Shown here in pieces: positions 2,529 through 20,188 of a stretch of 64,000 nucleotides of DNA. Each line of letters begins with the position of its first letter. The stretch's first letter is position 1. A program made the position numbers and the translations under genes. The stretch lies in IMG/VR virus record IMGVR_UViG_3300027793_000052, positions 124,001 to 188,000 of that record; one strand, 5' to 3'. The notes beneath the pieces were generated by a model. That model saw nothing but the letters and a program-made list of their open reading frames with translations, had not been told where the DNA came from and searched no databases.

Positions 2529-2548
2529 TATTAAAAGAACATTATTTC

Positions 2549-5952: not shown

Positions 5953-6031
5953 CATTCACATTTAAACATGTTGGTTTAGATTTAAACTGAATATTTATGT
6001 TAAAAATAACAAGTTTTGGAAAAATTCATTA

Positions 6032-7993
6032 ATGGCAGACAATAAAAATCTAACAGTCTATCAAAAGTTATTCTATATGTTTGGGCAAAATAAACCCGAA
6101 CAAAGAAATACTACCCCTAAATACACTTTTAGTGATGGTGACTTAATTACCACGCAATCTCAACAAGATTATAATAAACAAAAATTAGAGTTACAACAAC
6201 AAAATTATCTTGAGGCACAATGGGCAAGAGTAGATAGTGAGTTATATCAAAAGGCTGTTTATTATGAAACATCCAGAATAGCGTCTTATATGGATTATGA
6301 GGCAATGGAATTTTCACCTGAAATTGCAGCTGCTTTAGATATAATGTCAGAGGAATCTTGTACACCTAGTGAACAAGGTAAAATATTAACAATACAATCT
6401 AATTCTAAACGTGTTAAAAATATATTGGAGGATTTATTCTACAACATATTAGACATTCAAACTAATTTACCAATGTGGACACGTAATACGTGTAAGTATG
6501 GTGATAATTTTGTTTACTTAAAAATAGATAGACAAAAGGGTATTATTGGTTCTGCTCAATTAACTAATATAGAAATTGAACGTAAGGAAGAAGGTTTATT
6601 TGGTACCACACCATCATCTAATAAAGGTGACGGAGTTACTCAATTACCTGAAAAGAAAAAACAAGTTATGTTTCATTGGAGGGACAAATCTATGGATTTT
6701 AATCCTTGGGAAGTTGCTCATTTTCGTTTATTAGGTGATGATAGACGTTTACCTTATGGTACTTCAATATTAGAAAAAGCTAGACGTATTTGGAAACAAT
6801 TATTATTATCTGAGGATGCAATGTTAGTATATCGTGTTGTTAGAGCACCGGAAAGACGTGTATTTAAAATATATGTTGGTAATATAGATGATAAGGATGT
6901 TGATGCATATGTACAAAAAGTTGCTAATAAATTTAAAAGAAACCAAATAGTAGACCAAAAAACAGGTCAAGTAGATTTGCGTTATAATACATTGGCGGTA
7001 GACCAAGATTATTTTGTACCAGTTCGTGACCCTAACGCACCAAACCCAATAGATACTTTGGCGGGTGCTTCAAATTTGGACCAAATTGCTGATATTGAAT
7101 ACATACAAAGAAAACTATTAACAGCATTACGCGTTCCTAAACCTTTCTTAGGGTTTGACGAAGCGGCTGGTGACGGTAAAAGTTTAGCTTTATTGGATAT
7201 TAGATTTGCACGTACTATTAATCGTATACAACAATCAATGATACAAGAACTTAATAAGTTGGCTATTATACATTTATATGTTCTTGGTTTTCACGATGAT
7301 TTAAATAACTTTACACTTAATTTAACCAACCCTTCAACTCAAGGTGAAATGTTAAAGGTTGAACAGTGGAAAGAAAAAGTTCTTCTTTATAAGGATCTTG
7401 TTTCACAAATAGACGGCGGTATTGCCCCAACATCTCATACTTGGGCAAAAAAGAATATTTTTAATTGGACTGATGACGATATTAAAATTGACCTTGAACA
7501 ACAACGTATGGAAAGGGCTGCAGCTAAAGAGTTAGAAAACACGCCTGAAACAATTAAAAAGACAGGTTATTTTGAAAGAGTTGATAAACTATACGGTGAA
7601 ATTGGTTCTCCGGCTAAAACTGAGACTGGTGCTGAAGGTACTTCAGGTGATGAAGAAACAGGAGGCGGTGGAGGCTTTGGTGGTGGAGGCTTTGGTGGTG
7701 GAGGCGGAGGCTTCGGAGGTGGAGACCTTGGTGGAGACCTTGGCGGTGATTTAGGCGGTGGAGAAGGTGGTGAAGGTGAAACAGGCGGTGGAGAGGCTGG
7801 CACAGAAGAAGCTGGTGGTGGTGGATTTGGTGAAAGTTTTAGATATAAGGATAAATCTATAATAGACAAACTACTTATGGAAGGTATTCGTAAAAATGAA
7901 GATATAATGATGATGACAGATGGTATTAAAGATTTAATTGGTGAGGAAGAAATAGATGAAGATGATGATGAATTAGATTTATTACAATCATAA
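6032..7993 (+). CDS. Portal protein (T4 gp20-like) with Gly-rich/acidic C-terminal tail
   Basis: gp20 motifs: YEAMEFSPEIAAALDIMSEE, YRVVRAPERRVFKIYVGN, EYIQRKLLTALRVPK, DIRFARTINRIQ. Confidence 0.93.
   Translation: MADNKNLTVYQKLFYMFGQNKPEQRNTTPKYTFSDGDLITTQSQQDYNKQKLELQQQNYLEAQWARVDSELYQKAVYYETSRIASYMDYEAMEFSPEIAAALDIMSEESCTPSEQGKILTIQSNSKRVKNILEDLFYNILDIQTNLPMWTRNTCKYGDNFVYLKIDRQKGIIGSAQLTNIEIERKEEGLFGTTPSSNKGDGVTQLPEKKKQVMFHWRDKSMDFNPWEVAHFRLLGDDRRLPYGTSILEKARRIWKQLLLSEDAMLVYRVVRAPERRVFKIYVGNIDDKDVDAYVQKVANKFKRNQIVDQKTGQVDLRYNTLAVDQDYFVPVRDPNAPNPIDTLAGASNLDQIADIEYIQRKLLTALRVPKPFLGFDEAAGDGKSLALLDIRFARTINRIQQSMIQELNKLAIIHLYVLGFHDDLNNFTLNLTNPSTQGEMLKVEQWKEKVLLYKDLVSQIDGGIAPTSHTWAKKNIFNWTDDDIKIDLEQQRMERAAAKELENTPETIKKTGYFERVDKLYGEIGSPAKTETGAEGTSGDEETGGGGGFGGGGFGGGGGGFGGGDLGGDLGGDLGGGEGGEGETGGGEAGTEEAGGGGFGESFRYKDKSIIDKLLMEGIRKNEDIMMMTDGIKDLIGEEEIDEDDDELDLLQS
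7661..7830 (+). repeat. Gly-codon low-complexity repeats (GGGGF, GGDL) in the portal tail
   Basis: ggtggtggaggctttggt and ggtggagaccttggt units repeated in tandem. Confidence 0.8.
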
Positions 7994-7994
7994 C

Positions 7995-8004
7995 GATATT
8001 TATA
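7995..8004 (+). promoter_or_regulatory. Candidate late promoter GATATTTATA
   Basis: 14 nt upstream of the ATG at 8019. Confidence 0.6.
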
Positions 8005-8018
8005 ATTAAAAAATAAAG

Positions 8019-9026
8019 ATGGATTTTGGAACAATAAAAAATACATTCACAGAGATTTTAATTGAATCTCACATTAAAGGTGATGACAAAGGTAAAAACT
8101 TATATAAAAAATTTTTAAGAACACTTAAAGAAAGTGAGACGTTAAAAACATATTTTGTTGCTTACAAAAATTTAGAAGATAAAACTTTTAATACAGAAAA
8201 TGAGGCCACCGAGTACATTAAAGAACATGTAAGTATTTTAAAAAAATATAAAGGTCAAAAAAGTATTTTTAATGAAAATAAAAAACTTATTAACTTATTA
8301 GAAAGTAATGGTTATAAAATTACACAAAAACCAAACGATTTACATAAAGCTTTAAATAATTTAATTCGCACGAATAAAGATGTTACAACAATTGATACTA
8401 TTATAGAATCCACAAATATTCTTAAAAAACATTTAATTACCCCCAAAACAAAATTAAATGAAAACCTATACTCTAAAACTAAATTTTTTAAAGAGGGTGA
8501 TAAAATAAAAGTAACTAGATTACCAGAAGAAAAACCTAATGACAGACTACCTAGAGGTTATGAAAATCTTAAAATAGGTGATGTATTGACAGTTAATAAA
8601 ATATGGAGTAACACTGAAGGTGTGATTTACGGTACAGATTTTAGTGATAATTATGGTTTATCTAATTATGACGTAGAAAATTTAACTGGTAAAAAATTAA
8701 AAGAAAATAAAGTAAACCCAAACAAATTTTTAAATATTGTAGTTGAAAAATACAATGAAAAATACTCCAACATGGATGAACAAGATAAAAAAATCATTAA
8801 AACAATTTTATCTAGTAATGAAAAAGAAAAAGAAACATTATTAAATAATTTAAAAAAGGAGTCTATTAATTTAATCACTAAATTAGTAAAAGAATATGAT
8901 AATAATTTAGAGGTTAAAGTTAAGTTATTGGAATCAAAAGATTTTATTTATAATATGGGTTTTAATAAAGAAACTTTTAAAGATGATGTTGTTAAAATAT
9001 ACGATTTAATGAAAAATTTAAGTTAA
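8019..9026 (+). CDS. Putative prohead core/head-associated protein with an inserted SH3/KOW-like domain
   Basis: Directly after portal, helical and charged; the segment FKEGDKIKV...LKIGDVLTV is bounded by LNE and LKE sites. Confidence 0.55.
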   Translation: MDFGTIKNTFTEILIESHIKGDDKGKNLYKKFLRTLKESETLKTYFVAYKNLEDKTFNTENEATEYIKEHVSILKKYKGQKSIFNENKKLINLLESNGYKITQKPNDLHKALNNLIRTNKDVTTIDTIIESTNILKKHLITPKTKLNENLYSKTKFFKEGDKIKVTRLPEEKPNDRLPRGYENLKIGDVLTVNKIWSNTEGVIYGTDFSDNYGLSNYDVENLTGKKLKENKVNPNKFLNIVVEKYNEKYSNMDEQDKKIIKTILSSNEKEKETLLNNLKKESINLITKLVKEYDNNLEVKVKLLESKDFIYNMGFNKETFKDDVVKIYDLMKNLS

Positions 9027-9047
9027 TTAAAAATAATTTAAAAAAGT

Positions 9048-9082
9048 AAAGGGTCTGAAATAAAAAATTCAGACCTTTTTTA
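9048..9082 (+). terminator. Intrinsic terminator
   Basis: aaagggtctgaa-loop-ttcagacctttttt. Confidence 0.8.
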
Positions 9083-9136
9083 TTTTTTCTTAATATTTAT
9101 TAAAATAAATATAACCTACAAAAAAAAGTTTACATA

Positions 9137-9361
9137 ATGATGGAATCCGAAAATATCGTACAACTTAGACATTTAATAGATGAGTTGGACAAACAAGATA
9201 GAATGAGTGATGAATATCATAAAATATTAAATAGTATAGTTCAAATTATAAACGAAGAACAAAATATTATATGTGGGTTAAAAGGTAATGAAATTAAAAT
9301 AAAACATTACGAAAGTATTTGTAAGAATATACTTTCGATTATTTCATCAGTTAAAGTATGA
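9137..9361 (+). CDS. Hypothetical protein
   Basis: 74-aa ORF preceded by an ATATTTAT motif; overlaps the next gene. Confidence 0.6.
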   Translation: MMESENIVQLRHLIDELDKQDRMSDEYHKILNSIVQIINEEQNIICGLKGNEIKIKHYESICKNILSIISSVKV

Positions 9362-9711
9362 GTTTAGATGACGAAAACATATCAAAAAATGGTTGGTCTG
9401 AGTATGGTCGTTTGGTTCTTAAAGAATTAGAAAGACTAAATGCCGGACAAGAAGAAATTAAAAGAGATTTAGATAAAAAATTTCAAGAATTAAACCAAAA
9501 AATGTCAGATTTTAAAAACACTGAAAAGGATGTTGAGGACCTTAAAAAATGGAAAGAGAGTGTTATAGAAGTATGGTCAGTAACACAAATGCAACAAGGT
9601 AAGAATGAAATTTATAAACAAAAAAATGAATGGCAAAAAGTTATTGGTATTGTTATTGCATCACAAGTTGTTGTGGGTTTATTATTAGCTTTTAAAGATA
9701 AATTATTTTAA
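9358..9711 (+). CDS. Coiled-coil protein with C-terminal transmembrane helix
   Basis: Charged heptad region followed by VIGIVIASQVVVGLLLAF. Confidence 0.6.
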   Translation: MSLDDENISKNGWSEYGRLVLKELERLNAGQEEIKRDLDKKFQELNQKMSDFKNTEKDVEDLKKWKESVIEVWSVTQMQQGKNEIYKQKNEWQKVIGIVIASQVVVGLLLAFKDKLF

Positions 9712-9712
9712 T

Positions 9713-9985
9713 ATGTTAAAAGAAATTTTAAAAGAAAAAGGTAAATGGTCACAAGGGCGTGTTTATTTATTTTTATCAATAGTATCTTATTATATAACTT
9801 TAGGTATATTAACTTATGTTGGTTTTAAAAAAAGTGAAGTTGATATGGATAAGTTTAAAATGATTGTGGATGCATTAGAATACGCTATGACACTATTTGG
9901 TGGGTATGTCTTTGGTGGTAAATTTATTGATGCTTACAAATCAATATCCGAAAGTAAAAAAACTGATAAACAAGAAGAAACTTAA
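9713..9985 (+). CDS. Small two-TM membrane protein (holin-like)
   Basis: Two hydrophobic segments (VYLFLSIVSYYITLGILTYVGF; ALEYAMTLFGGYVFGG) and a charged C-terminus. Confidence 0.45.
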   Translation: MLKEILKEKGKWSQGRVYLFLSIVSYYITLGILTYVGFKKSEVDMDKFKMIVDALEYAMTLFGGYVFGGKFIDAYKSISESKKTDKQEET

Positions 9986-10009
9986 AAAAACCCCTAAAGG
10001 GGTTTTTTT
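9985..10009 (+). terminator. Intrinsic terminator
   Basis: aaaaaacccc-taaa-ggggttttttt. Confidence 0.85.
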
Positions 10010-10020
10010 ATTTTAAATAG

Positions 10021-10051
10021 TTTCCAACATAATAAATTTTTATTATACTTG
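10021..10051 (+). promoter_or_regulatory. Possible host-type promoter for glutamine synthetase
   Basis: TTTC-N19-TATACTTG, one mismatch in each box versus the Bacteroidota TTTG-N19-21-TAnnTTTG consensus. Confidence 0.4.
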
Positions 10052-10083
10052 TTTTAATAATAAAAAATAAAATAACAAAATTT

Positions 10084-11220
10084 ATGAATGACAAAGTTTT
10101 CTTAGAGTACATTTGGTTAGATGGTAATGTACCACAAAAACTTCGTAGTAAAACTAAAGTTGTGGACGCTCAAGATATTGTAACTTCAGAAGGTACAAAA
10201 AATCAGGGTTATCCAGAAGCTTACCCACTATGGAGTTTTGATGGTAGTTCCACTAAACAAGCTGGCAAAGAATTTGATTTTAAAGGTACTGATTGTGTAC
10301 TTAAACCCGTCTATGTGGTAGATGACCCTTTAAGAGGGTCTCCACACAAATTAGTTCTATGTGAGGTATATAACCCAGACGGTAAAACACCTCATAAAAC
10401 AAACACAAGATCCAAACTTACTAAATTATTAAAAGAACTTAAGTTTAAGGAGTACGATGCCAATCACAATGAAGTACCTTGGTTTGGTTGGGAACAAGAG
10501 TATATAATAACTCATCCGGCAAATGAAAGTAGTCCATTTCAATATGATGGTGGTATACCTTTAGGTTTTAATAAAGATGCTGATAAACCTAGACCTCAAG
10601 GTGATTATTATTGTGGTATTGGAGGGTTGAATGTCATTGGTAGAGATATTGTTGAGGATCATCTTAACAAATGTTCTCAAATAGGTTTATCTATTGGTGG
10701 TATTAACGCTGAAGTATTGATAGGTCAGTGGGAATACCAAATAGGTCCTGTGACAGCATTAAACGGTTCAGACCAATTATGGATTTCTAGATACATTTTA
10801 CAAAGAGTTGCTGAAAATTATGGCTATGATATTAGTTTACACCCTAAACCTGTAAAAGGTGATTGGAATGGTAGTGGGTGTCATGTTAATTTTTCAACAA
10901 AAGAAATGAGAGATTATAGAGGTTTAGATGTTATATTAAAGGCTTGTGAAAAATTAAAAGTTAGACACAAAGAACATATTGAAGTCTATGGTGAACATAA
11001 TGAATTACGTTTAACAGGTAATCATGAAACATCTAGTATTAATGATTTTAGTTTTGGTAATAGTGACCGTGGTTCTAGTATAAGAATTCCCGTACAAACA
11101 TATAACGATAAAAAGGGTTATTTCGAAGACAGACGACCAGCAGCAAACTGTGACCCATACAAAGTTTCTTTAGTTATGATTGAAACTGTTTTTGATAAAG
11201 CTGCAATAACAGTTGAGTAA
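10084..11220 (+). CDS. glnII: Glutamine synthetase, type II
   Basis: EYIWLDG, WSFDGSST, WFGWEQEY, QGDYYCG, GQWEYQIGP, HPKP..GDWNGSGCHVNFST, RLTGNHETS, RGSSIRIP, GYFEDRRPAANCDPY. Confidence 0.95.
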   Translation: MNDKVFLEYIWLDGNVPQKLRSKTKVVDAQDIVTSEGTKNQGYPEAYPLWSFDGSSTKQAGKEFDFKGTDCVLKPVYVVDDPLRGSPHKLVLCEVYNPDGKTPHKTNTRSKLTKLLKELKFKEYDANHNEVPWFGWEQEYIITHPANESSPFQYDGGIPLGFNKDADKPRPQGDYYCGIGGLNVIGRDIVEDHLNKCSQIGLSIGGINAEVLIGQWEYQIGPVTALNGSDQLWISRYILQRVAENYGYDISLHPKPVKGDWNGSGCHVNFSTKEMRDYRGLDVILKACEKLKVRHKEHIEVYGEHNELRLTGNHETSSINDFSFGNSDRGSSIRIPVQTYNDKKGYFEDRRPAANCDPYKVSLVMIETVFDKAAITVE

Positions 11221-11231
11221 CTAATAGTTTT

Positions 11232-11663
11232 ATGAAAAGAGGAAAAGAAATTAAACTTAACCTACCTTATAATTACAATGTTATATCAGGTGCGGTTGAT
11301 AATAGAAACCCAGAATCTATATACATACAGATATCTGCTTGGGGTAAACCAAAAAATAAAGAAGAAGAAAATTTTGACACGATTATTAAACAAAAATCAA
11401 AAAAAGTAAAACGTAAGTTGTTTGAGGTTTTAGATACCGAACAATTTTTACCAAAAGCAATTGTGGATTTTAATATGGCATCATCGGGTATTTCTTATGA
11501 TAAAAGAAGTTTTATGTCGGTAGAATTGACTTTATTTCAAAAGATACCACTACCAGTTAATTCAGAAGAATTAATACCTAAATTAAATAAAATATCTGAA
11601 ATAATTATAAAAGATATTTTTGAAAAGGATGAAGATTTTAAATTTTACAAAAAAAAGAGTTAA
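11232..11663 (+). CDS. Hypothetical protein
   Basis: 143-aa ORF cotranscribed with the glutamine synthetase gene. Confidence 0.65.
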   Translation: MKRGKEIKLNLPYNYNVISGAVDNRNPESIYIQISAWGKPKNKEEENFDTIIKQKSKKVKRKLFEVLDTEQFLPKAIVDFNMASSGISYDKRSFMSVELTLFQKIPLPVNSEELIPKLNKISEIIIKDIFEKDEDFKFYKKKS

Positions 11664-11664
11664 C

Positions 11665-11691
11665 AAAAAACCCCGAAATTTCGGGGTTTTT
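11665..11691. terminator. Bidirectional intrinsic terminator
   Basis: aaaaaaccccgaaatttcggggttttt between convergent genes. Confidence 0.88.
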
Positions 11692-11695
11692 ATTT

Positions 11696-14005
11696 TTAAA
11701 AATAAATTTCTTTAATTATACCTTCTAATTCTAAAGGCGGTACACCAATCCAATCTTTTATATTATTAGACATAACAGGTTTACCACCCTTACTTCTATC
11801 TACAGCGATTGTTATATGTGGTGTTGTTGTTTTTGTAACTAATTCCGTATCTACTTTGACTGCCATTACATTATCTAACTCACCTACATGTGTCACAACT
11901 AAGTCAATTGATTGACCTAACAGTGGTTTATAAACTTCTTTTATAGGACCCATGTTTATTGTCATATGGTGTGCAATAACTTCCCAACCCTTAGGTATGT
12001 TTAAAGATTTAATCAACCTAATTCTAGATTCTTCTGTTAATACAACAGCAGAATAAGATACTTTTTTAACTTCTTCTTTTATTAACTTTTTGAAAATCTC
12101 CCTCTCAATTCTATCTTTCTCAACACCTATTTCCCTACCTTTAAAACCTTGTTTTATTAATTCTTCACCAGATGTTGTTACTTTATAATTTATGAATGCT
12201 TCAACTGATTTTGGGTTTATGTTGTTCATTTGACCAAAAATTCTTAACGTATCGTCATCCATTTTTATAGCGTCATATCTTTCTCTAAGTTTATATAAAT
12301 CACCACTATTAGTCTTAAAAAATTGTATTAAGAAGGCAATCTTTTTACCTTCTTCAGACGTATACTTAAGTGTGTCAACCAAGTACTTTTCAACCAACTT
12401 AGGTTCATTACTTACAAGTAAAGTAGCTATAAGTACCAATGGATTTCTAGTTTCTATTAATGGATCCGTAGTCACTACAAGTCTACCGAATATCCAATCC
12501 CATAGGTTTAGGTTGGTTATCATTTGTGTGAAATAACCAACAGACTGTGATTGTTTAACACCTTTTAAGAATTCATCCCTAATTCTTTCCTGTGATAGTG
12601 GTAAACCGTTACCACTTATTGGTGTTTTATCTTTAGTTATAGCGTCAACAATATCCTTATCTAATTGTGAACCAACTCTAGACGCAAATCTAATTGCTCT
12701 AAGTATACGTAATTTATCCTCATCAAAACGTTCTGAGGCTGAACCAACTGTTCTAACCACATTACCTTCTATATCACCAATACCACCAACTAAATCCACA
12801 ACCTCCCCTTTATCTATATCATAAAATAAAGCGTTAATGGTTAAGTCACGTCTTTTAACATCTTGGTCTATTGTTGTAAACTCAACAGAGTCTGGTCTAC
12901 GTCCTTTTCCCACATCTTTCCGGAACGAAGCGAGTTCAAACTCACCATCAGGTGTTATAACATTAACTACACCAAATTGTTCACCAACTTCAATTGTTCT
13001 AAACATGTTTAACATGGATTTAACAACTTCAGGTGTGGCATTTGTGGCCAAATCAAAATCCTTAGGTTCCTGACCTAATAATAAATCTCTAACAGCACCA
13101 CCAACAACATATAACTCATAACCGTTATCTTTAAAGATTTGGTTCATTTGTTTTACCGAGTTAGGTAAATCCATATTTATCTTTTTCCTTACAACATTTT
13201 CATTTATGTTAGGTTTTTTATATAAAGGATTTTTTATATATATTGTTAAATCTTGTTCGTTTGATTTATAGTATCTAAAATCTTTAAAAAAAGACCAACA
13301 TTTATTATCATAACACTCACTATTATCATGGTTGTTATAACCCACCCGACCTAAGTAATCAGAACCCAAATCATCTTTATTATAAAATTTAACTAAAATT
13401 AAATCTTTACCAAGAGTTGTTATACCTTCATCTATTATGACCCCCAAATCCATATTAAACTCAGCATCAATATCATCACCGTTAATTAATACCTCCATAC
13501 CTTTTTTTAACAAACCAATTGTGGGTATGATAAATTCTTTATCAGTTTCATCATCACCAATAACATCTTCCACCCAACTATATTCATCATATTCTTTTAC
13601 TATACTTTCATTTATTTTGGTTGAAACTAATATTTTTAAATGTTCAGAATCCTCAAATTTTGTATAATCTCTCATAAATGACCAACATTTTTTACCACGA
13701 CAATCTTCTTTGTAGCTATCCCACATAGGTGTTGACATGTTGATTACATTCTCGTCAAATTTTTTATCGTTAAATTTAACTAAAATAACATCGTTACCCA
13801 CATGCTGTCTAATACCGATAATAAAACCAATATCATCATTAAAAATAACATCTTCATCTTGTAAATCATAACCATTTACCAAAACAGTATCATTAATATT
13901 TAACATTTCTTTTGATACTGCAGGGACAAACCCACTACCTAGTGTATCATTAACCCATTCAAAATCATCAAATTCTTTTAACATTTTTTTAATAAGATCT
14001 TTCAT
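11696..14005 (-). CDS. cca: Multidomain protein: two N-terminal repeats, class II CCA-type tRNA nucleotidyltransferase, C-terminal 2H phosphoesterase
   Basis: VVGGAVRDLLLG..PKDFDLAT, RRDLTINALFYD, RFDEDKLRILRAIRF. C-terminal HHMTI...PHITI are paired HxT motifs. The PAP-type GRRF signature is absent (VGEQFGVV). Confidence 0.88.
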   Translation of the reverse strand: MKDLIKKMLKEFDDFEWVNDTLGSGFVPAVSKEMLNINDTVLVNGYDLQDEDVIFNDDIGFIIGIRQHVGNDVILVKFNDKKFDENVINMSTPMWDSYKEDCRGKKCWSFMRDYTKFEDSEHLKILVSTKINESIVKEYDEYSWVEDVIGDDETDKEFIIPTIGLLKKGMEVLINGDDIDAEFNMDLGVIIDEGITTLGKDLILVKFYNKDDLGSDYLGRVGYNNHDNSECYDNKCWSFFKDFRYYKSNEQDLTIYIKNPLYKKPNINENVVRKKINMDLPNSVKQMNQIFKDNGYELYVVGGAVRDLLLGQEPKDFDLATNATPEVVKSMLNMFRTIEVGEQFGVVNVITPDGEFELASFRKDVGKGRRPDSVEFTTIDQDVKRRDLTINALFYDIDKGEVVDLVGGIGDIEGNVVRTVGSASERFDEDKLRILRAIRFASRVGSQLDKDIVDAITKDKTPISGNGLPLSQERIRDEFLKGVKQSQSVGYFTQMITNLNLWDWIFGRLVVTTDPLIETRNPLVLIATLLVSNEPKLVEKYLVDTLKYTSEEGKKIAFLIQFFKTNSGDLYKLRERYDAIKMDDDTLRIFGQMNNINPKSVEAFINYKVTTSGEELIKQGFKGREIGVEKDRIEREIFKKLIKEEVKKVSYSAVVLTEESRIRLIKSLNIPKGWEVIAHHMTINMGPIKEVYKPLLGQSIDLVVTHVGELDNVMAVKVDTELVTKTTTPHITIAVDRSKGGKPVMSNNIKDWIGVPPLELEGIIKEIYF

Positions 14006-14040
14006 ATATAGTAAATATCTACAACTACTGCATATTTATA
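14006..14040. promoter_or_regulatory. Divergent pair of candidate late promoters (cca gene / prohead protease)
   Basis: GATATTTAC on the minus strand (14011-14019) and CATATTTATA on the plus strand (14031-14040). Confidence 0.5.
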
Positions 14041-14055
14041 TAATAAACTTTAAAA

Positions 14056-14868
14056 ATGAAAATTTTAAAACCAGGTGAAACAAATACTAGGGGATTTTTA
14101 GTTGAATATGATTCCGGATTTGTGGCCTCTAATTTATCTTATAAAGGTAAAACAAATTCTGATTTAATTAAAGAACACCTACAATATTTAAACGAGTTTA
14201 AATCGGGTACAAACATAGGGAAAGATGGTAGTTTACCAGAAACAATCATAGTATACGCTGTATTACAAAAATGGGGAATTGAAAATAAAAACGGTAGAAT
14301 TTACCCTAAAGAAATTCTAGAAAGAGAAAACAAAAGATATCAGGAATATATAAAAATGGGTACATCTTTAGGTGAGTTAAACCACCCAGAGTCTTCAATC
14401 ATTGACGCCGATAGAGTATCACATAGAATTACTGAAACATGGTGGGATGGTAAAACTTTAATGGGTAAATTAGAACTTGACACAACACCGGGTTACCACA
14501 AAATGGGTATTATATCTTCTGTTGGTGATAAAGTGGTTAACATGATTAGAAAAGGTTGGACAGTTGGTATTTCATCTCGTGGTGTTGGATCCCTTAAACA
14601 AGAAGGTGGTAAAAATGTTGTACAAGATGATTTCGAATTAATATGTTGGGATATTGTTACATCACCGTCTACCCCAGGTTCTTGGATATCTTCTGAGGAA
14701 GGTGATTTAAAACAGTTTACAGAATCTTATATAAAAGATAACGGTTGTAATGGTTACACATGTCAATGGAATTTAATGGAAGAAAATGAACCAACCGAAA
14801 TCCATTTTAATTCAATACCTACATCAAATAATAAAATATTAAATAGCTTAAATAAATTTTTAAAATGA
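14056..14868 (+). CDS. Prohead core protease (T4 gp21-like)
   Basis: NKNGRIYPKEIL, GELNHP, VGISSRGVGS, DFELICWDIVTSPSTPGS. Confidence 0.92.
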   Translation: MKILKPGETNTRGFLVEYDSGFVASNLSYKGKTNSDLIKEHLQYLNEFKSGTNIGKDGSLPETIIVYAVLQKWGIENKNGRIYPKEILERENKRYQEYIKMGTSLGELNHPESSIIDADRVSHRITETWWDGKTLMGKLELDTTPGYHKMGIISSVGDKVVNMIRKGWTVGISSRGVGSLKQEGGKNVVQDDFELICWDIVTSPSTPGSWISSEEGDLKQFTESYIKDNGCNGYTCQWNLMEENEPTEIHFNSIPTSNNKILNSLNKFLK

Positions 14869-15254
14869 AAAAAGTAATTAAATTAACAGAAAACGATATT
14901 GAAAAGTTGGTTAAAAAAATAATCAACGAAGGTAAAACTATCAATGAAGATTTACCAGAAAGAGAACAGGAAAGAAAAGATACTAGTTTCCGTAGAAGAG
15001 AATTTCAACCTTATAACAGAGAAAAACAAATTCAAAAACTTTTTGGTAAATACGCTGAAGATGTACCACCTCAAGTAATCCAATATTTAAGAAAAATACC
15101 TGGAACAATAGTTAAGAGGTTAGTTGATATCTATGGTTATGACAGGATACAAGGTTATTTGGATAAGGCTTCAGTAAATCAAGTTCAAGAGAATTATAAC
15201 TTTGATGAAATAATTTCAGAAAAAAATAAATCTAACAAAAAATTAGATATTTAA
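14865..15254 (+). CDS. Hypothetical late protein with KKVIKLTENDIEKLVKKIINE N-terminus
   Basis: ATGA overlap with the protease gene; the N-terminal motif recurs inside 24836..25780. Confidence 0.65.
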   Translation: MKKVIKLTENDIEKLVKKIINEGKTINEDLPEREQERKDTSFRRREFQPYNREKQIQKLFGKYAEDVPPQVIQYLRKIPGTIVKRLVDIYGYDRIQGYLDKASVNQVQENYNFDEIISEKNKSNKKLDI

Positions 15255-15257
15255 TTT

Positions 15258-15314
15258 GCGCAGCTGCGCTTTTGCAAAAGCAGCTTTGCAAAGATCAAAA
15301 AGATCCTAAGCAGC
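15258..15314. repeat. GC-rich cluster of overlapping palindromes
   Basis: GCGCAGCTGCGC (15258-15269), GCTTTTGCAAAAGC (15268-15281), CTTTGCAAAG (15284-15293), GATC x2. Confidence 0.85.
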
Positions 15315-15332
15315 AAGAAAAAATTTTTAAAA

Positions 15333-15818
15333 ATGAATTTTATAGACAGAGTAATATTAGAGGCCAAGAAAAAAGGTAAGAAAGTAAATCCTTGGTCTGT
15401 TTGTACAAAATCAGTTGGTGATAAAATAGGTACTACAGAAAGAAGTAAATGGACCAAAGCACAAAAAGAAAGATATGAAAGATGTGTTAAGGATGTTAAG
15501 AAAAAATCACCAATAAAAGAAGATTATATAAATGAATATGGTGGTTATGATGATCCAAGTATGTTTGCCACACACGCTGGTGGATATATGGGAACTATCA
15601 AACATCATTATAATACCATAGTTAGTTCTTTAAATGAATTAAATGATTTATCACCTGAGGTTTTAGATGACCAACTTAGGGTGGCTTTAGAAAATTTTTT
15701 AACTAAGATGGAAGGTTCTGTTAGAAATTTAGGTAAAGAAGCTATTGAGGCAGAAAAAAGACATTTAGGAAGTCTTAGAGGTGGAAGACCTTCACCAAGA
15801 GATTTTGACGAAGAATAA
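15333..15818 (+). CDS. Hypothetical late protein (NPWSVC...YERCV domain)
   Basis: 161-aa ORF with N-terminus MNFIDRVILE. Confidence 0.65.
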   Translation: MNFIDRVILEAKKKGKKVNPWSVCTKSVGDKIGTTERSKWTKAQKERYERCVKDVKKKSPIKEDYINEYGGYDDPSMFATHAGGYMGTIKHHYNTIVSSLNELNDLSPEVLDDQLRVALENFLTKMEGSVRNLGKEAIEAEKRHLGSLRGGRPSPRDFDEE

Positions 15819-15840
15819 TCAATATAATATTTTAATATAA

Positions 15841-15877
15841 ATAAGGGATATGTGGTTTACATATCCCTTATTTTTTT
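15841..15877 (+). terminator. Intrinsic terminator
   Basis: 13-bp stem ataagggatatgt/acatatcccttat followed by a T-tract. Confidence 0.85.
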
Positions 15878-15912
15878 GTAGAATTGTTGTATAAATATAA
15901 AAAATTAAAACA

Positions 15913-16173
15913 ATGAATGATAATGTAGCAAAATACTTCTTAGTGAAAGTAGAATTTGAAACCATCAACGAAAATAATGGTAAACCAAAAAAGATTAGAA
16001 CACAGTATCTTGTTGATGCTATGACATGTACTGAGGCTGAGGCACGTACACGTGTTTATTTAAAAGATTCTGTAATGGATTATGAAATTGTTAGTACAAC
16101 TAAGAGCCCTATTGAGGATATTATCTTAGTACCAGATCCTGAATTACAACCGAAAGTTGTAAGTAAAAATTAA
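15913..16173 (+). CDS. DUF4494-like protein (Bacteroidota family)
   Basis: YFLVKVEFE...GKPKKIRTQYLVDAMTCTEAEAR resembles DUF4494. Confidence 0.7.
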   Translation: MNDNVAKYFLVKVEFETINENNGKPKKIRTQYLVDAMTCTEAEARTRVYLKDSVMDYEIVSTTKSPIEDIILVPDPELQPKVVSKN

Positions 16174-16643
16174 TGTCTATATTTTTTAGGTAGACCAACA
16201 CGATCTGCCAAATCTTGAAATATACCTTTATGATTTCTGGCTTCAGTGTTTTTATGTCCATGTGAAGCGTGTATTAATTCATGTTTCAGAATATCTTCAA
16301 CATATTCTTTATCTTCTAAGGCTTTGGGATGAATTTTCATAATTCCAAGGTCTTTTTCGTTTTCAGGGTGTTTAAATGATCCAATTTTACCAGCTTTAAT
16401 ATTGTCATCAACTTTTACCACAATATTATCATCACTAACTGGTTCTTCACCAGTTATATCTTTATAAGCATTTTTTACTTTTTTACCAATCTCATCTTTC
16501 ATATGACTAATTTTTTTAGTCTCAGCAGGATATTTTGACTTTTTAATAATTTTTTTTTGCATATAATCTGCTTTATCAGAAACGTCGTTTTTTGATTGAT
16601 TTTCTACAAATTCCCTTAAAATAAGTCTGATTTTATCTTTCAT
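16170..16643 (-). CDS. SprT-like zincin metalloprotease
   Basis: KHELIH (HExxH) with downstream H (HKGIFQDLADRVG); N-terminus MKDKIRLILRE. Confidence 0.7.
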   Translation of the reverse strand: MKDKIRLILREFVENQSKNDVSDKADYMQKKIIKKSKYPAETKKISHMKDEIGKKVKNAYKDITGEEPVSDDNIVVKVDDNIKAGKIGSFKHPENEKDLGIMKIHPKALEDKEYVEDILKHELIHASHGHKNTEARNHKGIFQDLADRVGLPKKYRH

Positions 16644-16736
16644 ATTTAATAAATATCACAATTTTTTATAAAAATTTTTAACTTTTTTATTATCAAGTTA
16701 TTGCACTTTGCCGTCTTAATACATATTTATTTATAA

Positions 16737-16754
16737 ATCTCGTGTAAGCGAGAT
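16737..16754 (+). promoter_or_regulatory. Small hairpin in the scaffold-gene leader, after an ATATTTAT motif
   Basis: atctcg-tgtaag-cgagat. Confidence 0.35.
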
Positions 16755-16786
16755 AATATAACCATTAAAAACAATAAAAAAAGAAA

Positions 16787-18268
16787 ATGGCAAACGAAAA
16801 GAAATCAATTATTGAGGAAGCTCTTCTTGAGGCACAAGAAATTGACGCCACTTTCAAATCAAACGCAAAAGAAATACTGTCTCAGACGATGAGTTCAGAA
16901 ATTGAAGAAATGGTAAAGGAATCATTAACTGGTTCGAAAAAAAGATTGAAAGAGGATGAAGAAGAGGAAGAAGAATTAGACCTTGACTTAGACACTGAAG
17001 AAGAAGAGGAAGAATTAGACTTGGGTTTAGACACTGAAGAAGAAGGTGAAGACGAGACTGAAGAAACCGAAATGGATCTTGACTTAGGTGGTGAAGAAGA
17101 GGAAACTGAGATTGAAGATTTAGACCTTGACTTTGAAACCGAAGAAGGTGAAGAAGAGGGGGAAATGGATTTAGATCTTGGTGATGAAACTGAAGAAGTT
17201 ATGGGTGACGTTGAAACTGTGGATCTTACACAAGAACCATTATCAGACGTAATCTCAGTATTCAAAAAAATGGGTCCTGAAGATGAAATCGAAGTTGTTA
17301 ACGACAACGGTATCGTAACTCTTAAAGACAACAAATCTGGTTCTGAATACAGAATCGAAATGAACCCGGCAGGTGAAGTTGCTAGCGTTGAAGCTGGTGA
17401 AATTGAACTTGGTGAGGGTGAAGAAGGTTCTGATAACGTTATCTACGAAATAGTTGTGGATGATGGTGAGGAAGAAATGGAAGACGAAATGTCTTACATG
17501 GATTATGCCGAAGACGAAATGTCTTACATGGGTGATAAAATGTCTTATATGAACTATAAGAAAAGTGGTTTAAAAAATCCTGAAAAGGCTGATTTAGACA
17601 AAGACCACGATATTACACCTTATGAAAAGAAAAGAGGTATGGCTATCGAAAAATCTATGGAAGACGAGGGTGAAGACCATATGGATTATATGAAACATGA
17701 TGATGAAGATCACATGGATTATATGTCACGTACTTTAGGTGCTGGCAGAAGATTTGGACGTAATGGTTTAGACAAACCAAAAGCTGCTCCAAGACATCTT
17801 TATGTTGGTGAATCTAAAACTCCACAGATTTCAAAACTCATCAAAGAAAACACAAACTTAAATACCAGAAATTCTGAACTTGAAGTAGAAAATAAGGAAC
17901 TAAAAGAAAACTACGAAAAAATGGTAGACGCTCTTAAACAGTTCAGAACAAAACTTCAAGAAGTGGCTGTGTTCAACAGCAATCTTACTTACGCAGTAAG
18001 ATTATTCACTGAAAATACAACTACTAAAGAAGAAAAGAATGACATATTAAAAAGATTGGATTCGGCTAAATCTTTAAAAGAATCTCAATCAATTTATAAA
18101 CAACTTGTTAAAGAAATTTCTAACAGTAAGGCACCTATAAAGGAAACTATTGAAGAAAAAATCAATAACACTTCTTCTAGTGGAGCATTAATCAGTGAAC
18201 AAAGTGTTTTTGTACACCCAGAGATTGAAAAAATGAAAAAACTTTGGGGTTACAGTTACAAAAAATAA
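16787..18268 (+). CDS. Prohead scaffolding/core protein (T4 gp22 position)
   Basis: Very acidic with a C-terminal coiled coil and many (I/L)xE sites; immediately upstream of the major capsid gene. Confidence 0.75.
   Translation: MANEKKSIIEEALLEAQEIDATFKSNAKEILSQTMSSEIEEMVKESLTGSKKRLKEDEEEEEELDLDLDTEEEEEELDLGLDTEEEGEDETEETEMDLDLGGEEEETEIEDLDLDFETEEGEEEGEMDLDLGDETEEVMGDVETVDLTQEPLSDVISVFKKMGPEDEIEVVNDNGIVTLKDNKSGSEYRIEMNPAGEVASVEAGEIELGEGEEGSDNVIYEIVVDDGEEEMEDEMSYMDYAEDEMSYMGDKMSYMNYKKSGLKNPEKADLDKDHDITPYEKKRGMAIEKSMEDEGEDHMDYMKHDDEDHMDYMSRTLGAGRRFGRNGLDKPKAAPRHLYVGESKTPQISKLIKENTNLNTRNSELEVENKELKENYEKMVDALKQFRTKLQEVAVFNSNLTYAVRLFTENTTTKEEKNDILKRLDSAKSLKESQSIYKQLVKEISNSKAPIKETIEEKINNTSSSGALISEQSVFVHPEIEKMKKLWGYSYKK
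17480..17531 (+). repeat. 22-bp direct repeat with 30-nt period (EDEMSYM) in the scaffold gene
   Basis: gaagacgaaatgtcttacatgg at 17480 and 17510. Confidence 0.8.
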
Positions 18269-18299
18269 TAACAAATAACAATTAAAAAACCAATAAAAA

Positions 18300-20069
18300 A
18301 TGGGATATTTATTAAAATCAGGTGAGGTTGGTAATATCGGATTAAAGCATCAAAAAGCAATCCGTGAGGCAACTGTAAACAAATGGGAATCTTTAGGGTT
18401 CTTAGAGGGTCTTGAAGGCCACATCAGAGAAAACATCGCTTTGTTATATGAAAACCAAGCATCAACTCTTATCAGTGAAACATCTACTGCAGGTGGAGGA
18501 TCTACTGGATCTTTTGAAACTGTAGTGTTTCCAATCGTAAGACGTGTATTCTCTAAATTATTAGCTAACGATATCGTATCGGTTCAAGCTTTAAATTTAC
18601 CAATCGGTAAATTATTCTACTTCGTTCCAAAAACGTCTGATAGAGTTGATGACGCAGCTTTCTTAGCTGGTACAAACGGTGGTACATCTAAACATAGAGG
18701 TTTAGCTATCGCTAGTTGTGTTAACTGTCCTGAATCTACATTTAGTGGTTGTACTAAAAACCTTTATGATATTTTCTATAACGATGGATTATACGATCAA
18801 TCAAAAGGTGAAATTACTCTTAAAGTTGTTTCTGGTACAGCAGTTGTATTAACAGCTTGTACAAGTGGAAGTGAATATGTAGCAGGAAAAACTCCAGCAG
18901 CTTCTGATGGTTCATTACGTTACCAAAAATTTGAAGTTAAAGGTTTTAGCAGTACAGCTCCTGGACGTTTAGTAGGTCCTGATGGAAATGAAATGGATAC
19001 AGAATCTTTCTTAGCTTCATTAACAGTTGTAGCTGGTACTCAAGTATTAGATCCTTCTGGAAATGTAATTTTCAATCAAGGTGACCAAATTCCTTTCCGT
19101 TTAGTAACTCAAAAATACGGTAGAGGTATTGTTGACTACGGTGATATTTGTTCAGCAGATGGTAAATTGTATATTGAATTAGATTTCACAAGTCCAAATT
19201 GTGTTTCTTGTTCAACTAAAACATTTGATGGATATATCGGGGCTAATTATACAGGAACTTCTGTAACATCAGCATCTTTCGTAGCTATCGCTTGGAGACA
19301 ATACGCTGATTTAGAAGCTGAATCTAACATGGGTGAAGTTTCTTTTGAACTTGAATCTGTAACTGTATCGGTTACTGAACGTAAGTTAAGAGCTACTTGG
19401 ACTCCTGAATTAGCACAAGACGTTAGTGCATTCCACAACATCGATGCTGAAGCTGAATTAACAGCATTATTATCTGAGCAAGTTGCGGCTGAAATTGACC
19501 GTGAAATCTTAATGGATTTACGTAAAGGTGCAGCATGGCAATTACGTTGGGATTACAACGGATGGAAGCGTTTACCAAACAACAATGGTTACACTCAAAA
19601 AGATTGGAACCAAACTTTGATGACGGCTGTCAACCAAATCTCAGCTCAAATCCACAAATCTACGTTAAGAGGTGGAGCTAACTTCGTTGTTGTATCTTCT
19701 GAGGTATCAGCAGTATTAGACGATTTAGAATACTTCCACGTATCTAACGCAGCTCCTGAGCAAGACCAATATAACATGGGTATTGAAAGAGTAGGTTCAT
19801 TAAATGGTCGTTACACTGTTTACCGTGACCCATACGCTCCAGCGTACTCTGTTATCATCGGACATAAAGGTAAGTCATTACTTGACACTGGTTACATCTA
19901 CGCTCCGTATGTACCAATGCAGTTGACTCCTACAATGTACAATCCGTTCAACTTCGTACCAGTAAAGGGTATAATGACACGTTACGCCAAAAAAATGGTT
20001 AATAATCGCTTCTATGGCCATATTCGTGTAGATGGATTACGTACATTCGACGTAAGAGAATTACGTTAA
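18300..20069 (+). CDS. Major capsid protein (T4 gp23-like)
   Basis: FPIVRRVFSKLLANDIVSVQ, RKLRATWTPELAQD..AFHNIDAEAEL..LSEQVAAEIDREI, GYIYAPYVP, GIMTRYA. Confidence 0.96.
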   Translation: MGYLLKSGEVGNIGLKHQKAIREATVNKWESLGFLEGLEGHIRENIALLYENQASTLISETSTAGGGSTGSFETVVFPIVRRVFSKLLANDIVSVQALNLPIGKLFYFVPKTSDRVDDAAFLAGTNGGTSKHRGLAIASCVNCPESTFSGCTKNLYDIFYNDGLYDQSKGEITLKVVSGTAVVLTACTSGSEYVAGKTPAASDGSLRYQKFEVKGFSSTAPGRLVGPDGNEMDTESFLASLTVVAGTQVLDPSGNVIFNQGDQIPFRLVTQKYGRGIVDYGDICSADGKLYIELDFTSPNCVSCSTKTFDGYIGANYTGTSVTSASFVAIAWRQYADLEAESNMGEVSFELESVTVSVTERKLRATWTPELAQDVSAFHNIDAEAELTALLSEQVAAEIDREILMDLRKGAAWQLRWDYNGWKRLPNNNGYTQKDWNQTLMTAVNQISAQIHKSTLRGGANFVVVSSEVSAVLDDLEYFHVSNAAPEQDQYNMGIERVGSLNGRYTVYRDPYAPAYSVIIGHKGKSLLDTGYIYAPYVPMQLTPTMYNPFNFVPVKGIMTRYAKKMVNNRFYGHIRVDGLRTFDVRELR

Positions 20070-20097
20070 TTAGTGTAAAAAACTAATATTCTAATAT

Positions 20098-20126
20098 AAA
20101 AGAGGGACAATTGTCCCTCTTTTTTT
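20098..20126 (+). terminator. Intrinsic terminator after the capsid gene
   Basis: Perfect palindrome aaaagagggacaattgtccctctttt plus a T-tract. Confidence 0.9.
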
Positions 20127-20152
20127 ATGTCTTATTAATACCATATAACCTA

Positions 20153-20181: not shown

Positions 20182-20188
20182 TATATTT

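What the first reader, a model, noticed from the sequence alone, without database searches (positions are those of the whole stretch)
13199..14005. Polyprotein-like architecture: domains separated by prohead-protease-type sites and an 'E-x-D-F-E-W' sub-motif
Seen: the CCA protein has two ~135-aa internal repeats (VL(V/I)NG.D...FN.D.G.II...D.ILVKF...C..K.CWSF..D). They start with LKE-FDDFEWV and VKE-YDEYSWV, and the four modules are separated by INE (131-133), INE (267-269) and IKEE (642-645). A similar LKE-SEDGFDW junction starts an extra module inside 21827..22672. Inference: domains are accreted as cassettes and released by head-protease cleavage, so one gene may deliver several proteins.
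Basis: partly seen in the sequence, partly recalled or inferred. Interest (0 to 1): 0.6.

Follow-up and report, generated by a model that had tools for sequence, protein, structure and literature searches.

The report
Leader-tagged modular phage tRNA-repair enzyme
A giant T4-like phage makes a tRNA-repair enzyme out of gene-sized modules, and the seams keep the end of an 11-residue N-terminal tag that 18 of its proteins share and that resembles phage T4's protease-cut capsid-targeting leader. Whether the seams are actually cut has not been tested.

Summary
ORF 11696..14005 (-) encodes a 769-aa protein with five parts: an 11-aa leader, two homologous ~130-aa modules (BLASTP E 5e-14), a class II CCA-adding core, and a C-terminal 2H cyclic phosphodiesterase.

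Related sequences show that the modules are real cassettes. Orthologues carry 0, 1 or 2 N-modules, always inserted directly after an [LI]-x-E. The phosphodiesterase is a separate gene next to a CCA gene in other phages. The C-module of 21827..22672 occurs alone or behind three different partners, each time after L-[KN]-E.

The 'LKE + DFxW' start is the tail of a tag, M-[KR]-x-L-I-[KR]-K-I-L-[KR]-E, carried by 18 of 387 ORFs here and by more than 120 loci in IMG/VR. This genome encodes a T4 gp21-type prohead protease right beside the CCA gene, and so do five other large tag-bearing IMG/VR genomes.

My best reading is a T4-like capsid-targeting and cleavage leader. Cleavage is plausible at the N-terminus, possible at the two N-module seams, and unlikely between the CCA core and the phosphodiesterase, where the site is not conserved. 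No proteolysis has been shown, and [IL]xE sites are not enriched overall.

The parts
13973..14005 (-). 11-aa N-terminal leader (residues 1-11), ending L-K-E. It is the genome-wide tag M-[KR]-x-L-I-[KR]-K-I-L-[KR]-E.
   Evidence: 18 of 387 N-termini in the genome score above 16 bits on a leader PSSM, and the next best scores -0.7. At least 151 matches in IMG/VR. DNA differences are mostly third-position or K/R changes. AF2 pLDDT is below 50.
13946..13972 (-). Acidic/aromatic sub-motif after the leader (residues 12-20, the D-F-E-W type).
   Evidence: W17 and D20 are invariant in 16 module copies. The motif is about 25-fold enriched directly after leaders in IMG/VR ORFs. It is predicted disordered.
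13616..13936 (-). N-module 1 (residues 24-130), an SH3-like beta-barrel of unknown function.
   Evidence: AF2 pLDDT is 83-92. Only generic CAP-Gly/Tudor/KOW barrel matches, Z up to 6.9. Homologues occur only in CCA orthologues.
13592..13615 (-). Seam J1 (residues 131-138, I-N-E then V-K-E), a decayed leader in front of module 2.
   Evidence: The repeat alignment puts V-K-E on the leader's L-K-E. pLDDT is below 50 from residue 132. I-K-E or I-N-E is kept here in the other two-module orthologues.
13235..13591 (-). N-module 2 (residues 139-257), including its own Y-D-E-Y-S-W-V start motif.
   Evidence: BLASTP E 5e-14 against module 1; alignments A1 and A5.
13199..13234 (-). Seam J2 (residues 258-269, ending I-N-E), a leader remnant in front of the CCA core.
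   Evidence: MAFFT aligns it with the N-terminal leader of module-less orthologues. Across 11 orthologues with modules, P1 Glu is kept in 11 of 11 and P3 Leu/Ile in 10 of 11, while P4 and P5 vary.
12071..13198 (-). Class II CCA-adding (tRNA nucleotidyltransferase) core, residues 270-645. Its last four residues are seam J3 (IKEE 642-645, nt 12071..12082).
   Evidence: Pfam PolyA_pol 2.3e-35. PHROG 2244 tRNA nucleotidyltransferase 1.9e-53. The GGxVRD, DxD, RRD and EDxxR motifs are present. IKEE is the last turn of helix 624-645.
11699..12070 (-). C-terminal 2H phosphoesterase domain (residues 646-769), of the CNPase / Trl1-CPD type, with H-x-T at 680-682 and 730-732.
   Evidence: 213 mostly stand-alone ~127-aa homologues. 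PF08302 is matched by 17 of 18 aligned family members. Both H-x-T motifs are invariant. The AF2 model (pLDDT 88.5) matches the CNPase catalytic domain at probability 1.0.
14056..14868 (+). T4 gp21-family prohead protease, the divergent neighbour of the CCA gene (50-bp spacer).
   Evidence: Pfam Peptidase_S77 6.9e-31. phrog_207 head maturation protease 2.2e-42. The same arrangement is seen in L010 and L012.
21827..22672 (+). Second leader-tagged two-module protein (281 aa). Leader at 21827..21859; internal L-K-E + S-E-D-G-F-D-W seam at 22379..22408.
   Evidence: The N-module stands alone in L112. The C-module stands alone after a leader in L059 and sits behind other modules in L096 and L130.
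25811..26089 (-). Third leader-tagged ORF in the window (92 aa).
   Evidence: Leader PSSM score 30.6 bits.
16170..16643 (-). Variant-leader ORF (157 aa, weak SprT-like HExxH match) inside the head-gene cluster.
   Evidence: Leader PSSM score 16.3 bits. Pfam SprT-like 3.7e-4, below the curated cut-off.

Best explanation
Shown: the gene encodes one multi-domain tRNA 3'-end repair enzyme of a ~318-kb distant T4-like phage. A CCA-adding core is fused to a 2H 2',3'-cyclic phosphodiesterase, and in front of it sit two copies of a lineage-specific SH3-like barrel. The protein was built by in-frame fusion and duplication of gene-sized cassettes. Each cassette began with the clade's 11-residue leader, and each seam keeps that leader's last residues, [LI]-x-E.

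Inferred: the leader works like the capsid targeting sequence (CTS) of T4 internal proteins. It would take the protein into the prohead core, and the neighbouring gp21-type protease would cut it off after the Glu. About 18 mostly small, unannotated proteins of this phage, including this enzyme, would then be packaged and delivered with the DNA.

The two disordered N-module seams keep the same site and may also be cut, freeing the barrels. The CCA-phosphodiesterase pair most likely stays as one chain, so that the phosphodiesterase opens a 2',3'-cyclic phosphate end and the CCA core then rebuilds the 3' end.
For: Architecture.

Cassette history:
- Orthologues of ~510 aa have the leader directly on the CCA core, those of 642-653 aa have one module, and those of 748-769 aa have two. 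Every insertion sits right after [LI]xE.
- MAFFT aligns the internal seam with the orthologues' N-terminal leader.
- The phosphodiesterase is a separate gene 5 nt downstream of a CCA gene in L147/L148.
- The second protein's modules recombine at L-[KN]-E.

Leader:
- It is carried by 18 of 387 ORFs, cleanly separated from all other N-termini.
- IMG/VR holds at least 151 matches. All but 5 open real ORFs, mostly of 100-200 aa. The reversed-pattern control found 0 matches against 10 in five genomes.
- Its sequence variation is mostly synonymous or K/R.
- It is predicted disordered, as is seam J1.

Link to the head protease:
- The S77 protease gene is adjacent. S77 was also found in six of the ten other tag-bearing IMG/VR records tested; three of those six are at least 98% complete, and the four without it are 59-71% complete fragments.
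- The gene that overlaps the protease stop carries a leader-like I-x-E motif.
- A conserved L-I-[SN]-E lies about 22 aa before the VRR motif of the gp23-like capsid protein, and L-I-[KR]-E lies in the protease N-terminus.

T4 precedent:
- A 10-residue CTS is the only thing shared by otherwise unrelated internal proteins. Residues 8 and 10 of it govern processing.
- Known gp21 sites are ITE, LTE and LIE (PMC9026906, PMC3012670, PMC5694885).

16 of the 18 leader proteins match no family, as is typical of T4 internal proteins.
Against: - No proteomic or biochemical data exist; the phage is known only from metagenomes.
- [IL]xE is at chance frequency in the protein.
- Met replaces Leu/Ile at P3 of seam J2 in the closest orthologue, L004.
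- The enzyme has an obvious cytoplasmic job that needs no packaging: the genome has 22 tRNA genes and about 18 of them lack an encoded CCA.
- Conservation of L-x-E at seams could reflect a role of the whole 'LKE + acidic + FxW' linear motif other than cleavage.
- The specificity of this distant gp21 homologue is assumed, not measured.
- The complex prediction gave no verdict.
Confidence: 0.5

Rival explanations
1. An uncleaved cytoplasmic enzyme with a tag that serves another purpose. On this view the leader is a clade-specific N-terminal element for something other than capsid targeting. Candidates are efficient translation start on very short or absent 5' leaders, a docking helix, or a degradation/timing tag. 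The seams keep its tail only as a historical scar or as part of the FxW linear motif. The full-length protein matures and repairs phage and host tRNAs in the cytoplasm.
For: - 22 phage tRNA genes, most without encoded CCA, give a direct cytoplasmic role.
- CCA enzymes and 2H phosphoesterases are described as RNA-repair components of jumbo phages (PMC7824862).
- In leader genes the ATATTTAT motif lies only 5-8 nt from the ATG, which suggests near-leaderless mRNAs for which an A/T-rich start could matter.
- [IL]xE is not enriched.
Against: - Variation in the leader is synonymous or K/R, including CGT for Arg, so the peptide rather than the RNA is under selection.
- Internal seams keep [LI]xE while the rest of the leader has decayed, in at least six independent junctions.
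- The length, the M-K start and the L-x-E end match the T4 CTS, and the family co-occurs with S77 proteases.
Confidence: 0.3
2. A true polyprotein. All three seams would be cut in the prohead, releasing two barrel proteins, a CCA enzyme and a phosphodiesterase as four separate products.
For: - Every seam in the window protein has an I-x-E or V-K-E site.
- All modules correspond to units that occur separately or in other combinations.
- Seam J3 scores 8.4 bits as a weak leader-like string, rank 14 of about 98,000 internal positions.
Against: - At J3 the site is I-x-E in only 5 of 36 orthologue variants, M-x-E in 22 and absent in 9, while the fusion itself is kept.
- In the model it is the last turn of a helix followed by a 3-residue loop, not a free linker.
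- End-healing plus CCA addition is a coherent two-step reaction that benefits from one chain. E. coli Cca likewise carries its own phosphodiesterase domain (textbook knowledge).
Confidence: 0.1
3. Coincidence. The xE sites at the seams would be chance products of a proteome rich in Lys, Glu, Ile and Leu, and the similarity of module starts would be ordinary repeat homology.
For: 11 [IL]xE sites observed against about 10 expected. The two INE sites are copies of one repeat unit.
Against: - P1 Glu is invariant in 16 of 16 module starts.
- Seams in unrelated fusions all carry L-[KN]-E.
- The leader family is far beyond chance.
Confidence: 0.1

Closest known systems
Capsid targeting sequence (CTS) of phage T4 internal proteins IPI-III and Alt, removed by prohead protease gp21
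   Same: Both are short N-terminal peptides (10 aa in T4, 11 here) shared by otherwise unrelated, mostly small proteins. Both end in [LI]-x-E. A gp21-family protease is encoded in the genome, and the cargo genes are highly variable between relatives (PMC9026906, PMC3012670).
   Different: - The sequence differs (basic amphipathic L-I-K-K-I-L-K-E).
- The repertoire is much larger (18 proteins).
- About 30% of the leaders are followed by an acidic FxW motif.
- Site-bearing remnants persist inside fused multi-module proteins.
- The cargo includes an RNA-repair enzyme.
- Neither packaging nor cleavage has been shown.
Multi-site head-protein processing in giant phages phiKZ, 201phi2-1 and SPN3US
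   Same: Many head and ejection proteins are cut after Glu at a three-residue motif by a gp21-related protease, some of them at several sites (PMC5694885).
   Different: Those phages use [AGS]-x-E and have no single shared leader. This phage belongs to the T4 superfamily proper (S77 protease, gp23-like capsid protein).
Bacterial class II CCA-adding enzymes with a phosphohydrolase domain (E. coli Cca), and the CCA enzymes of jumbo phages
   Same: The nucleotidyltransferase head with the GGxVRD, DxD, RRD and EDxxR motifs is followed by an end-healing phosphoesterase in the same chain (PMC7824862).
   Different: The healing domain is a 2H phosphoesterase rather than an HD domain. The leader and the SH3-like barrels are additions at the N-terminus.
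CNPase / fungal Trl1 CPD branch of the 2H phosphoesterase superfamily
   Same: Two H-x-T motifs, fold match at probability 1.0, and PF08302 hits across the family.
   Different: The domain is much smaller (~125 aa against ~200). It is a phage-borne family that mostly stands alone, and here it is fused to a CCA enzyme. The window's own domain falls below the Pfam reporting level when scanned alone.
Viral polyproteins
   Same: One ORF made of units that elsewhere exist as separate genes, with protease-type sites at the seams.
   Different: No cleavage is shown. One seam is not conserved, and the units include non-autonomous accessory barrels found nowhere else.

Membership tests
Class II CCA-adding tRNA nucleotidyltransferase | PolyA_pol head domain with motif A (GGxVRD ... 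DxD) | tested here: met
   PF01743 2.3e-35 over residues 298-418. GGAVRD at 302 and DFD at 316.
Class II CCA-adding tRNA nucleotidyltransferase | Motifs B (RRD) and D (EDxxR), which select CTP and ATP | tested here: met
   RRD at 385 and EDKLR at 429. PHROG 2244 matches residues 295-643.
Class II CCA-adding tRNA nucleotidyltransferase | CCA addition activity on tRNA | not testable with these tools
   Needs an enzyme assay. Most of the 22 phage tRNA genes lack an encoded CCA, which is consistent with a need for the activity.
2H phosphoesterase (CNPase / Trl1-CPD type) | Two H-x-[TS] catalytic motifs | tested here: met
   HMT at 680 and HIT at 730, invariant in 18- and 56-sequence alignments.
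2H phosphoesterase (CNPase / Trl1-CPD type) | 2H fold | tested here: met
   The AF2 model (pLDDT 88.5) matches the CNPase catalytic domain at probability 1.0, E 1e-4, TM about 0.55.
2H phosphoesterase (CNPase / Trl1-CPD type) | Match to the curated family model PF08302 | tested here: inconclusive
   17 of 18 aligned relatives match at E up to 0.01 (best 1.5e-6), but the window's own domain does not.
T4-type CTS-bearing internal (packaged) proteins | Short N-terminal peptide shared by otherwise unrelated proteins | tested here: met
   18 of 387 ORFs; 125 distinct ORFs in IMG/VR. The proteins are unrelated beyond the tag.
T4-type CTS-bearing internal (packaged) proteins | Peptide ends in the gp21 site [LI]-x-E, and a gp21-family protease is encoded | tested here: met
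   The leader ends L-[KR]-E. S77 protease at 14056..14868, and in six of ten other tag-bearing IMG/VR records tested, including all three that are at least 98% complete.
T4-type CTS-bearing internal (packaged) proteins | Leader-dependent presence in the head and removal of the leader | not testable with these tools
   Needs virion proteomics or a packaging assay. The complex prediction returned no verdict.
Viral polyprotein | Units that exist as independent genes or proteins elsewhere | tested here: met
   Orthologues consist of the CCA-phosphodiesterase pair alone or with 1-2 modules. The phosphodiesterase stands alone next to a CCA gene. The modules of the second protein occur separately. 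The SH3-like module itself was never found alone.
Viral polyprotein | Conserved protease site at every junction | tested here: not met
   J1 and J2 are conserved: Glu in 16 of 16 module starts, and P3 Leu/Ile in 10 of 11 J2 junctions. J3 is I-x-E in 5 variants, M-x-E in 22 and absent in 9 of 36.
Viral polyprotein | Demonstrated cleavage into separate products | not testable with these tools
   No proteomic data are available.

The most novel reading that the evidence does not exclude
The 11-residue leader defines the injected proteome of a large, uncultured clade of distant T4-like giant phages. One leader can carry several fused cargo modules into the prohead, where the gp21-type protease cuts them apart at the retained [LI]-x-E seams. 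One such cargo is a ready-made tRNA 3'-end repair enzyme (cyclic phosphodiesterase plus CCA-adding). It would enter the next host together with the DNA, before any phage gene is expressed, to pre-empt tRNA-directed defence or to service the phage's own CCA-less tRNAs.
Probability: 0.3. Interest if true: 0.8.

Novelty: new variant of a known kind. Interest (0 to 1): 0.6.

Why it matters
If the leader is a capsid-targeting and cleavage tag, a simple sequence rule would list the packaged, host-delivered proteins of a whole clade of uncultured giant phages. That is about 5% of each proteome, almost all of it unannotated, and likely to be rich in counter-defence functions, as T4's internal proteins are.

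It would also show that cargo evolves by stacking cassettes behind a single tag, and that an RNA-repair enzyme can be a virion component. In addition, the leader would be a candidate portable tag for packaging foreign proteins into non-model phages, as the T4 CTS has been used.

Even without cleavage, two results are solid new annotation. The first is the CCA enzyme fused to a 2H phosphodiesterase, backed by the same two genes lying adjacent in other phages. The second is the natural series of orthologues with 0, 1 or 2 modules.

Tried and rejected
- Complex prediction of the protease with residues 1-40 returned 'no answer' (score 0.00). It counts neither for nor against binding.
- The N-module has no relatives outside the CCA orthologues. 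The word search found nothing. HMMER over 1.84 billion representatives found only the orthologue P0125, plus P0126, a low-complexity Ig-repeat protein that I judge spurious. There is no paralogue in the genome and no match in the phage collection.
- The profile of the C-domain against PDB sequences gave only spurious Myb hits; fold comparison was needed instead.
- I disregarded weak Pfam hits below their cut-offs: DUF5864, TilS_C and PI3Ka, and Complex1_LYR, MC4 and HMUD2.
- Megablast of the gene against cultured and deposited phages found no match.
- A literature search for the leader string found nothing, and the CTS literature does not mention a leader of this kind.
- I considered that the leader is a DNA- or RNA-level element (a promoter or translation cassette). 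I rejected this as the main explanation because the variation is synonymous or K/R.
- I considered that J3 is also a leader remnant (8.4 bits). I left this open but weak, because the same helix ends the CCA protein in phages where the two genes are separate.
- No reads tools were used, and nothing resembling human sequence was encountered.
Full report
**What is there**

The window belongs to a 317,983-bp IMG/VR virus record that is 96% complete, and covers positions 124001-188000 of it. ORF 11696..14005 on the minus strand encodes 769 aa.
- L-K-E followed by F-D-D-F-E-W-V at residues 9-18
- I-N-E at 131-133
- V-K-E followed by Y-D-E-Y-S-W-V at 136-145
- I-N-E at 267-269
- I-K-E-E at 642-645

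The finding's coordinates 13199..14005 are exactly residues 1-269. Residues 1-134 and 135-272 are homologous (BLASTP E 5e-14, 32% identity).

**Domains**

- **CCA core.** Residues ~270-645 are a class II CCA-adding enzyme: Pfam PolyA_pol 2.3e-35 and PHROG 2244 1.9e-53. The GGxVRD, DxD, RRD and EDxxR motifs are present.
- **C-terminal phosphodiesterase.** Residues 646-769 belong to a large family of mostly stand-alone ~127-aa proteins (213 hits).
  - The N-termini of those proteins align with residue ~648.
  - 17 of 18 aligned members match PF08302, the cyclic phosphodiesterase of fungal tRNA ligase.
  - Two H-x-T motifs are invariant.
  - The AF2 model (pLDDT 88.5) matches the CNPase catalytic domain at probability 1.0.
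  - It is therefore a 2H 2',3'-cyclic phosphodiesterase.
- **Repeated N-module.** It folds confidently as a small beta-barrel (residues 24-131, pLDDT 83-92). It resembles only generic SH3-like barrels such as CAP-Gly, Tudor and KOW, with Z up to 6.9. It has no relatives outside orthologues of this same enzyme.

**The surroundings**

- The divergent neighbour, 50 bp away, is a T4 gp21-family prohead protease (Pfam S77 6.9e-31; phrog_207).
- It is followed by small ORFs, an acidic 493-aa probable scaffold protein and a gp23-like major capsid protein.
- The nearest cultured capsid relatives are Rhodothermus phage RM378, the Flavobacterium 'immuto' phages and Microcystis phage Mel-JY01. This makes the phage a distant member of the T4 superfamily.

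**The motif is the end of a genome-wide leader**

- The first 11 residues are one instance of M-[KR]-x-L-I-[KR]-K-I-L-[KR]-E. A position-specific score separates 18 of 387 N-termini (above 16 bits) from all others (at most -0.7).
- Sixteen of the 18 proteins match no family.
All but five open real ORFs, mostly of 100-200 aa. A reversed-pattern control gave 0 matches against 10.
- Differences among the copies are mostly third-position or K/R changes, including CGT codons for Arg, so the peptide itself is under selection.
- 30% of the leaders are followed within 15 residues by an acidic [FWYL]-x-W motif, against 1.2% of control windows.
- AF2 predicts the leader plus this motif to be disordered.
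- S77 proteases occur in six of the ten other tag-bearing IMG/VR records tested. Three of those six are at least 98% complete, and the four records without a match are 59-71% complete fragments.

**Are the modules cassettes? Yes**

- Orthologues fall into three length classes:
  - ~510 aa, with the leader joined directly to the CCA core
  - 642-653 aa, with one module
  - 748-769 aa, with two modules
- In every case the module or modules sit between an [LI]-x-E and the next unit. MAFFT aligns the window's internal K-N-P-L-Y-K-K-P-N-I-N-E with the orthologues' N-terminal leader.
- Over 16 module copies the P1 Glu is invariant.
- At the seam before the CCA core, P3 is Leu or Ile in 10 of 11 proteins (Met in L004), while P4 and P5 vary freely.
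- In other phages the phosphodiesterase is a separate gene 5 nt downstream of a CCA gene, and that CCA protein ends where the window's seam lies.
  - Its N-module is a complete 171-aa protein in L112.
  - Its C-module follows a leader directly in L059.
  - In L096 and L130 the same C-module sits behind two other N-modules, each time after L-[KN]-E plus the acidic FxW motif.
- A very recent fusion elsewhere in the genome (G000 80025..80831) still has the complete leader inside it, apart from the initial Met.

**Are the seams cut? Unknown**

In favour:
- The leader has the length, the M-K start and the [LI]-x-E end of the T4 capsid targeting sequence.
- In T4 that sequence is the only feature shared by otherwise unrelated internal proteins, and gp21 removes it. 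Residues 8 and 10 of the 10-residue T4 peptide govern processing. Known gp21 sites include ITE, LTE and LIE (PMC9026906, PMC3012670, PMC5694885).
- Seam J1 is predicted disordered.
- The gp23-like capsid protein keeps L-I-[SN]-E about 22 residues before its VRR motif, and the protease keeps L-I-[KR]-E near its N-terminus.
- The gene that overlaps the protease stop carries a leader-like I-x-E motif.

Against:
- [IL]-x-E is at chance frequency in the protein (11 sites against ~10 expected).
- The two I-N-E sites are copies of one repeat unit.
- The CCA/phosphodiesterase seam is I-x-E in only 5 of 36 orthologue variants, M-x-E in 22 and lacks the site in 9. In the model it is the last turn of a helix followed by a three-residue loop.
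- The enzyme has a plain cytoplasmic role: 22 phage tRNA genes, about 18 of them without an encoded CCA.
- The complex prediction gave no verdict.

**Verdict**

- The cleavage interpretation is a reasonable but untested extension. I rate it at about 0.5 for removal of the N-terminal leader, lower for the two N-module seams, and about 0.1 for a cut between the CCA core and the phosphodiesterase.
- The most useful result goes beyond the original finding: a clade-wide, T4-CTS-like leader that marks about 5% of the proteome, including a fused 'heal and add' tRNA 3'-end repair enzyme.
- This is a new variant of a known kind (T4 CTS and internal proteins; jumbo-phage RNA repair, PMC7824862).

Noticed in passing
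L010:6061-8680 and L012:6004-8467 (also L011): In three related contigs the orthologous CCA gene is split into a 139-aa N-piece (still carrying the leader) and a 426-440-aa C-piece. A 224-233-aa ORF with a GIY-YIG-like start lies between them. Both pieces carry short new extensions at the break. This could be a homing-endonuclease-split gene or an intron.
   Followed up: partly
Window 14865..15254 (+) and 24836..25780 (+, internal, near 25400); G000 37416..38078: A second, related motif L-[TN]-E-N-D-I-E-K-L-V-K-K-I-I-[NRK]-E occurs in three proteins. One is the 129-aa ORF that overlaps the stop of the prohead protease gene. The motif is conserved in L004, L005, L011 and L012, and it may mark prohead core proteins.
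   Followed up: partly
Genome-wide; in the window upstream of 2549, 6032, 8019, 14005(-), 14056, 16643(-), 21827 and 27636(-): The octamer ATATTTAT lies within 60 nt upstream of 80 of 387 ORFs, at two preferred distances from the ATG (5-8 nt and 13-21 nt). It precedes both head genes and leader-tagged genes, and in the latter it sits mostly at 5-7 nt. It is probably a phage promoter element; the short spacing suggests near-leaderless mRNAs.
   Followed up: partly
G000 2410..21688 (outside the window): 22 tRNA genes lie in clusters. Only about four have an encoded CCA end, so most need CCA addition.
   Followed up: yes
G000 80025..80831 and 81175..81861 (outside the window): These are tandem leader-tagged paralogues. 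The first is a fusion of two units and still has a complete leader inside it, with Thr in place of the start Met, at residue ~144. This looks like a very recent example of the same fusion process.
   Followed up: partly
Window 20111..21793 (+): A large homing-endonuclease-like ORF (phrog_3339 5e-104, phrog_559 HNH) sits directly after the major capsid protein gene.
   Followed up: no
G000 75850..76332; L130; L093: A small Cys-x2-Cys-G-W-S-W-K-L zinc-ribbon-like unit directly follows the leader in several proteins. In L130 it is fused in front of the C-module of the 21827..22672 protein. It is another shuffled cassette.
   Followed up: no
Window 16170..16643 (-): A 157-aa ORF with a variant leader (M-K-D-K-I-R-L-I-L-R-E) and an H-E-x-x-H motif (weak SprT-like match) lies on the opposite strand inside the head-gene cluster.
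   Followed up: no
L150:1-3382: A 1971-aa protein combines PolyA_pol, its RNA-binding domain and a weak 2'-5' RNA ligase-like match, two genes upstream of a stand-alone phosphodiesterase homologue. This is a different and much larger RNA-repair fusion in another giant phage.
   Followed up: no
Window 10084..11220 (+): A 378-aa ORF upstream of the CCA gene matches only phrog_21628 (function unknown). By eye its sequence resembles glutamine synthetase-like enzymes; I did not test this.
   Followed up: no
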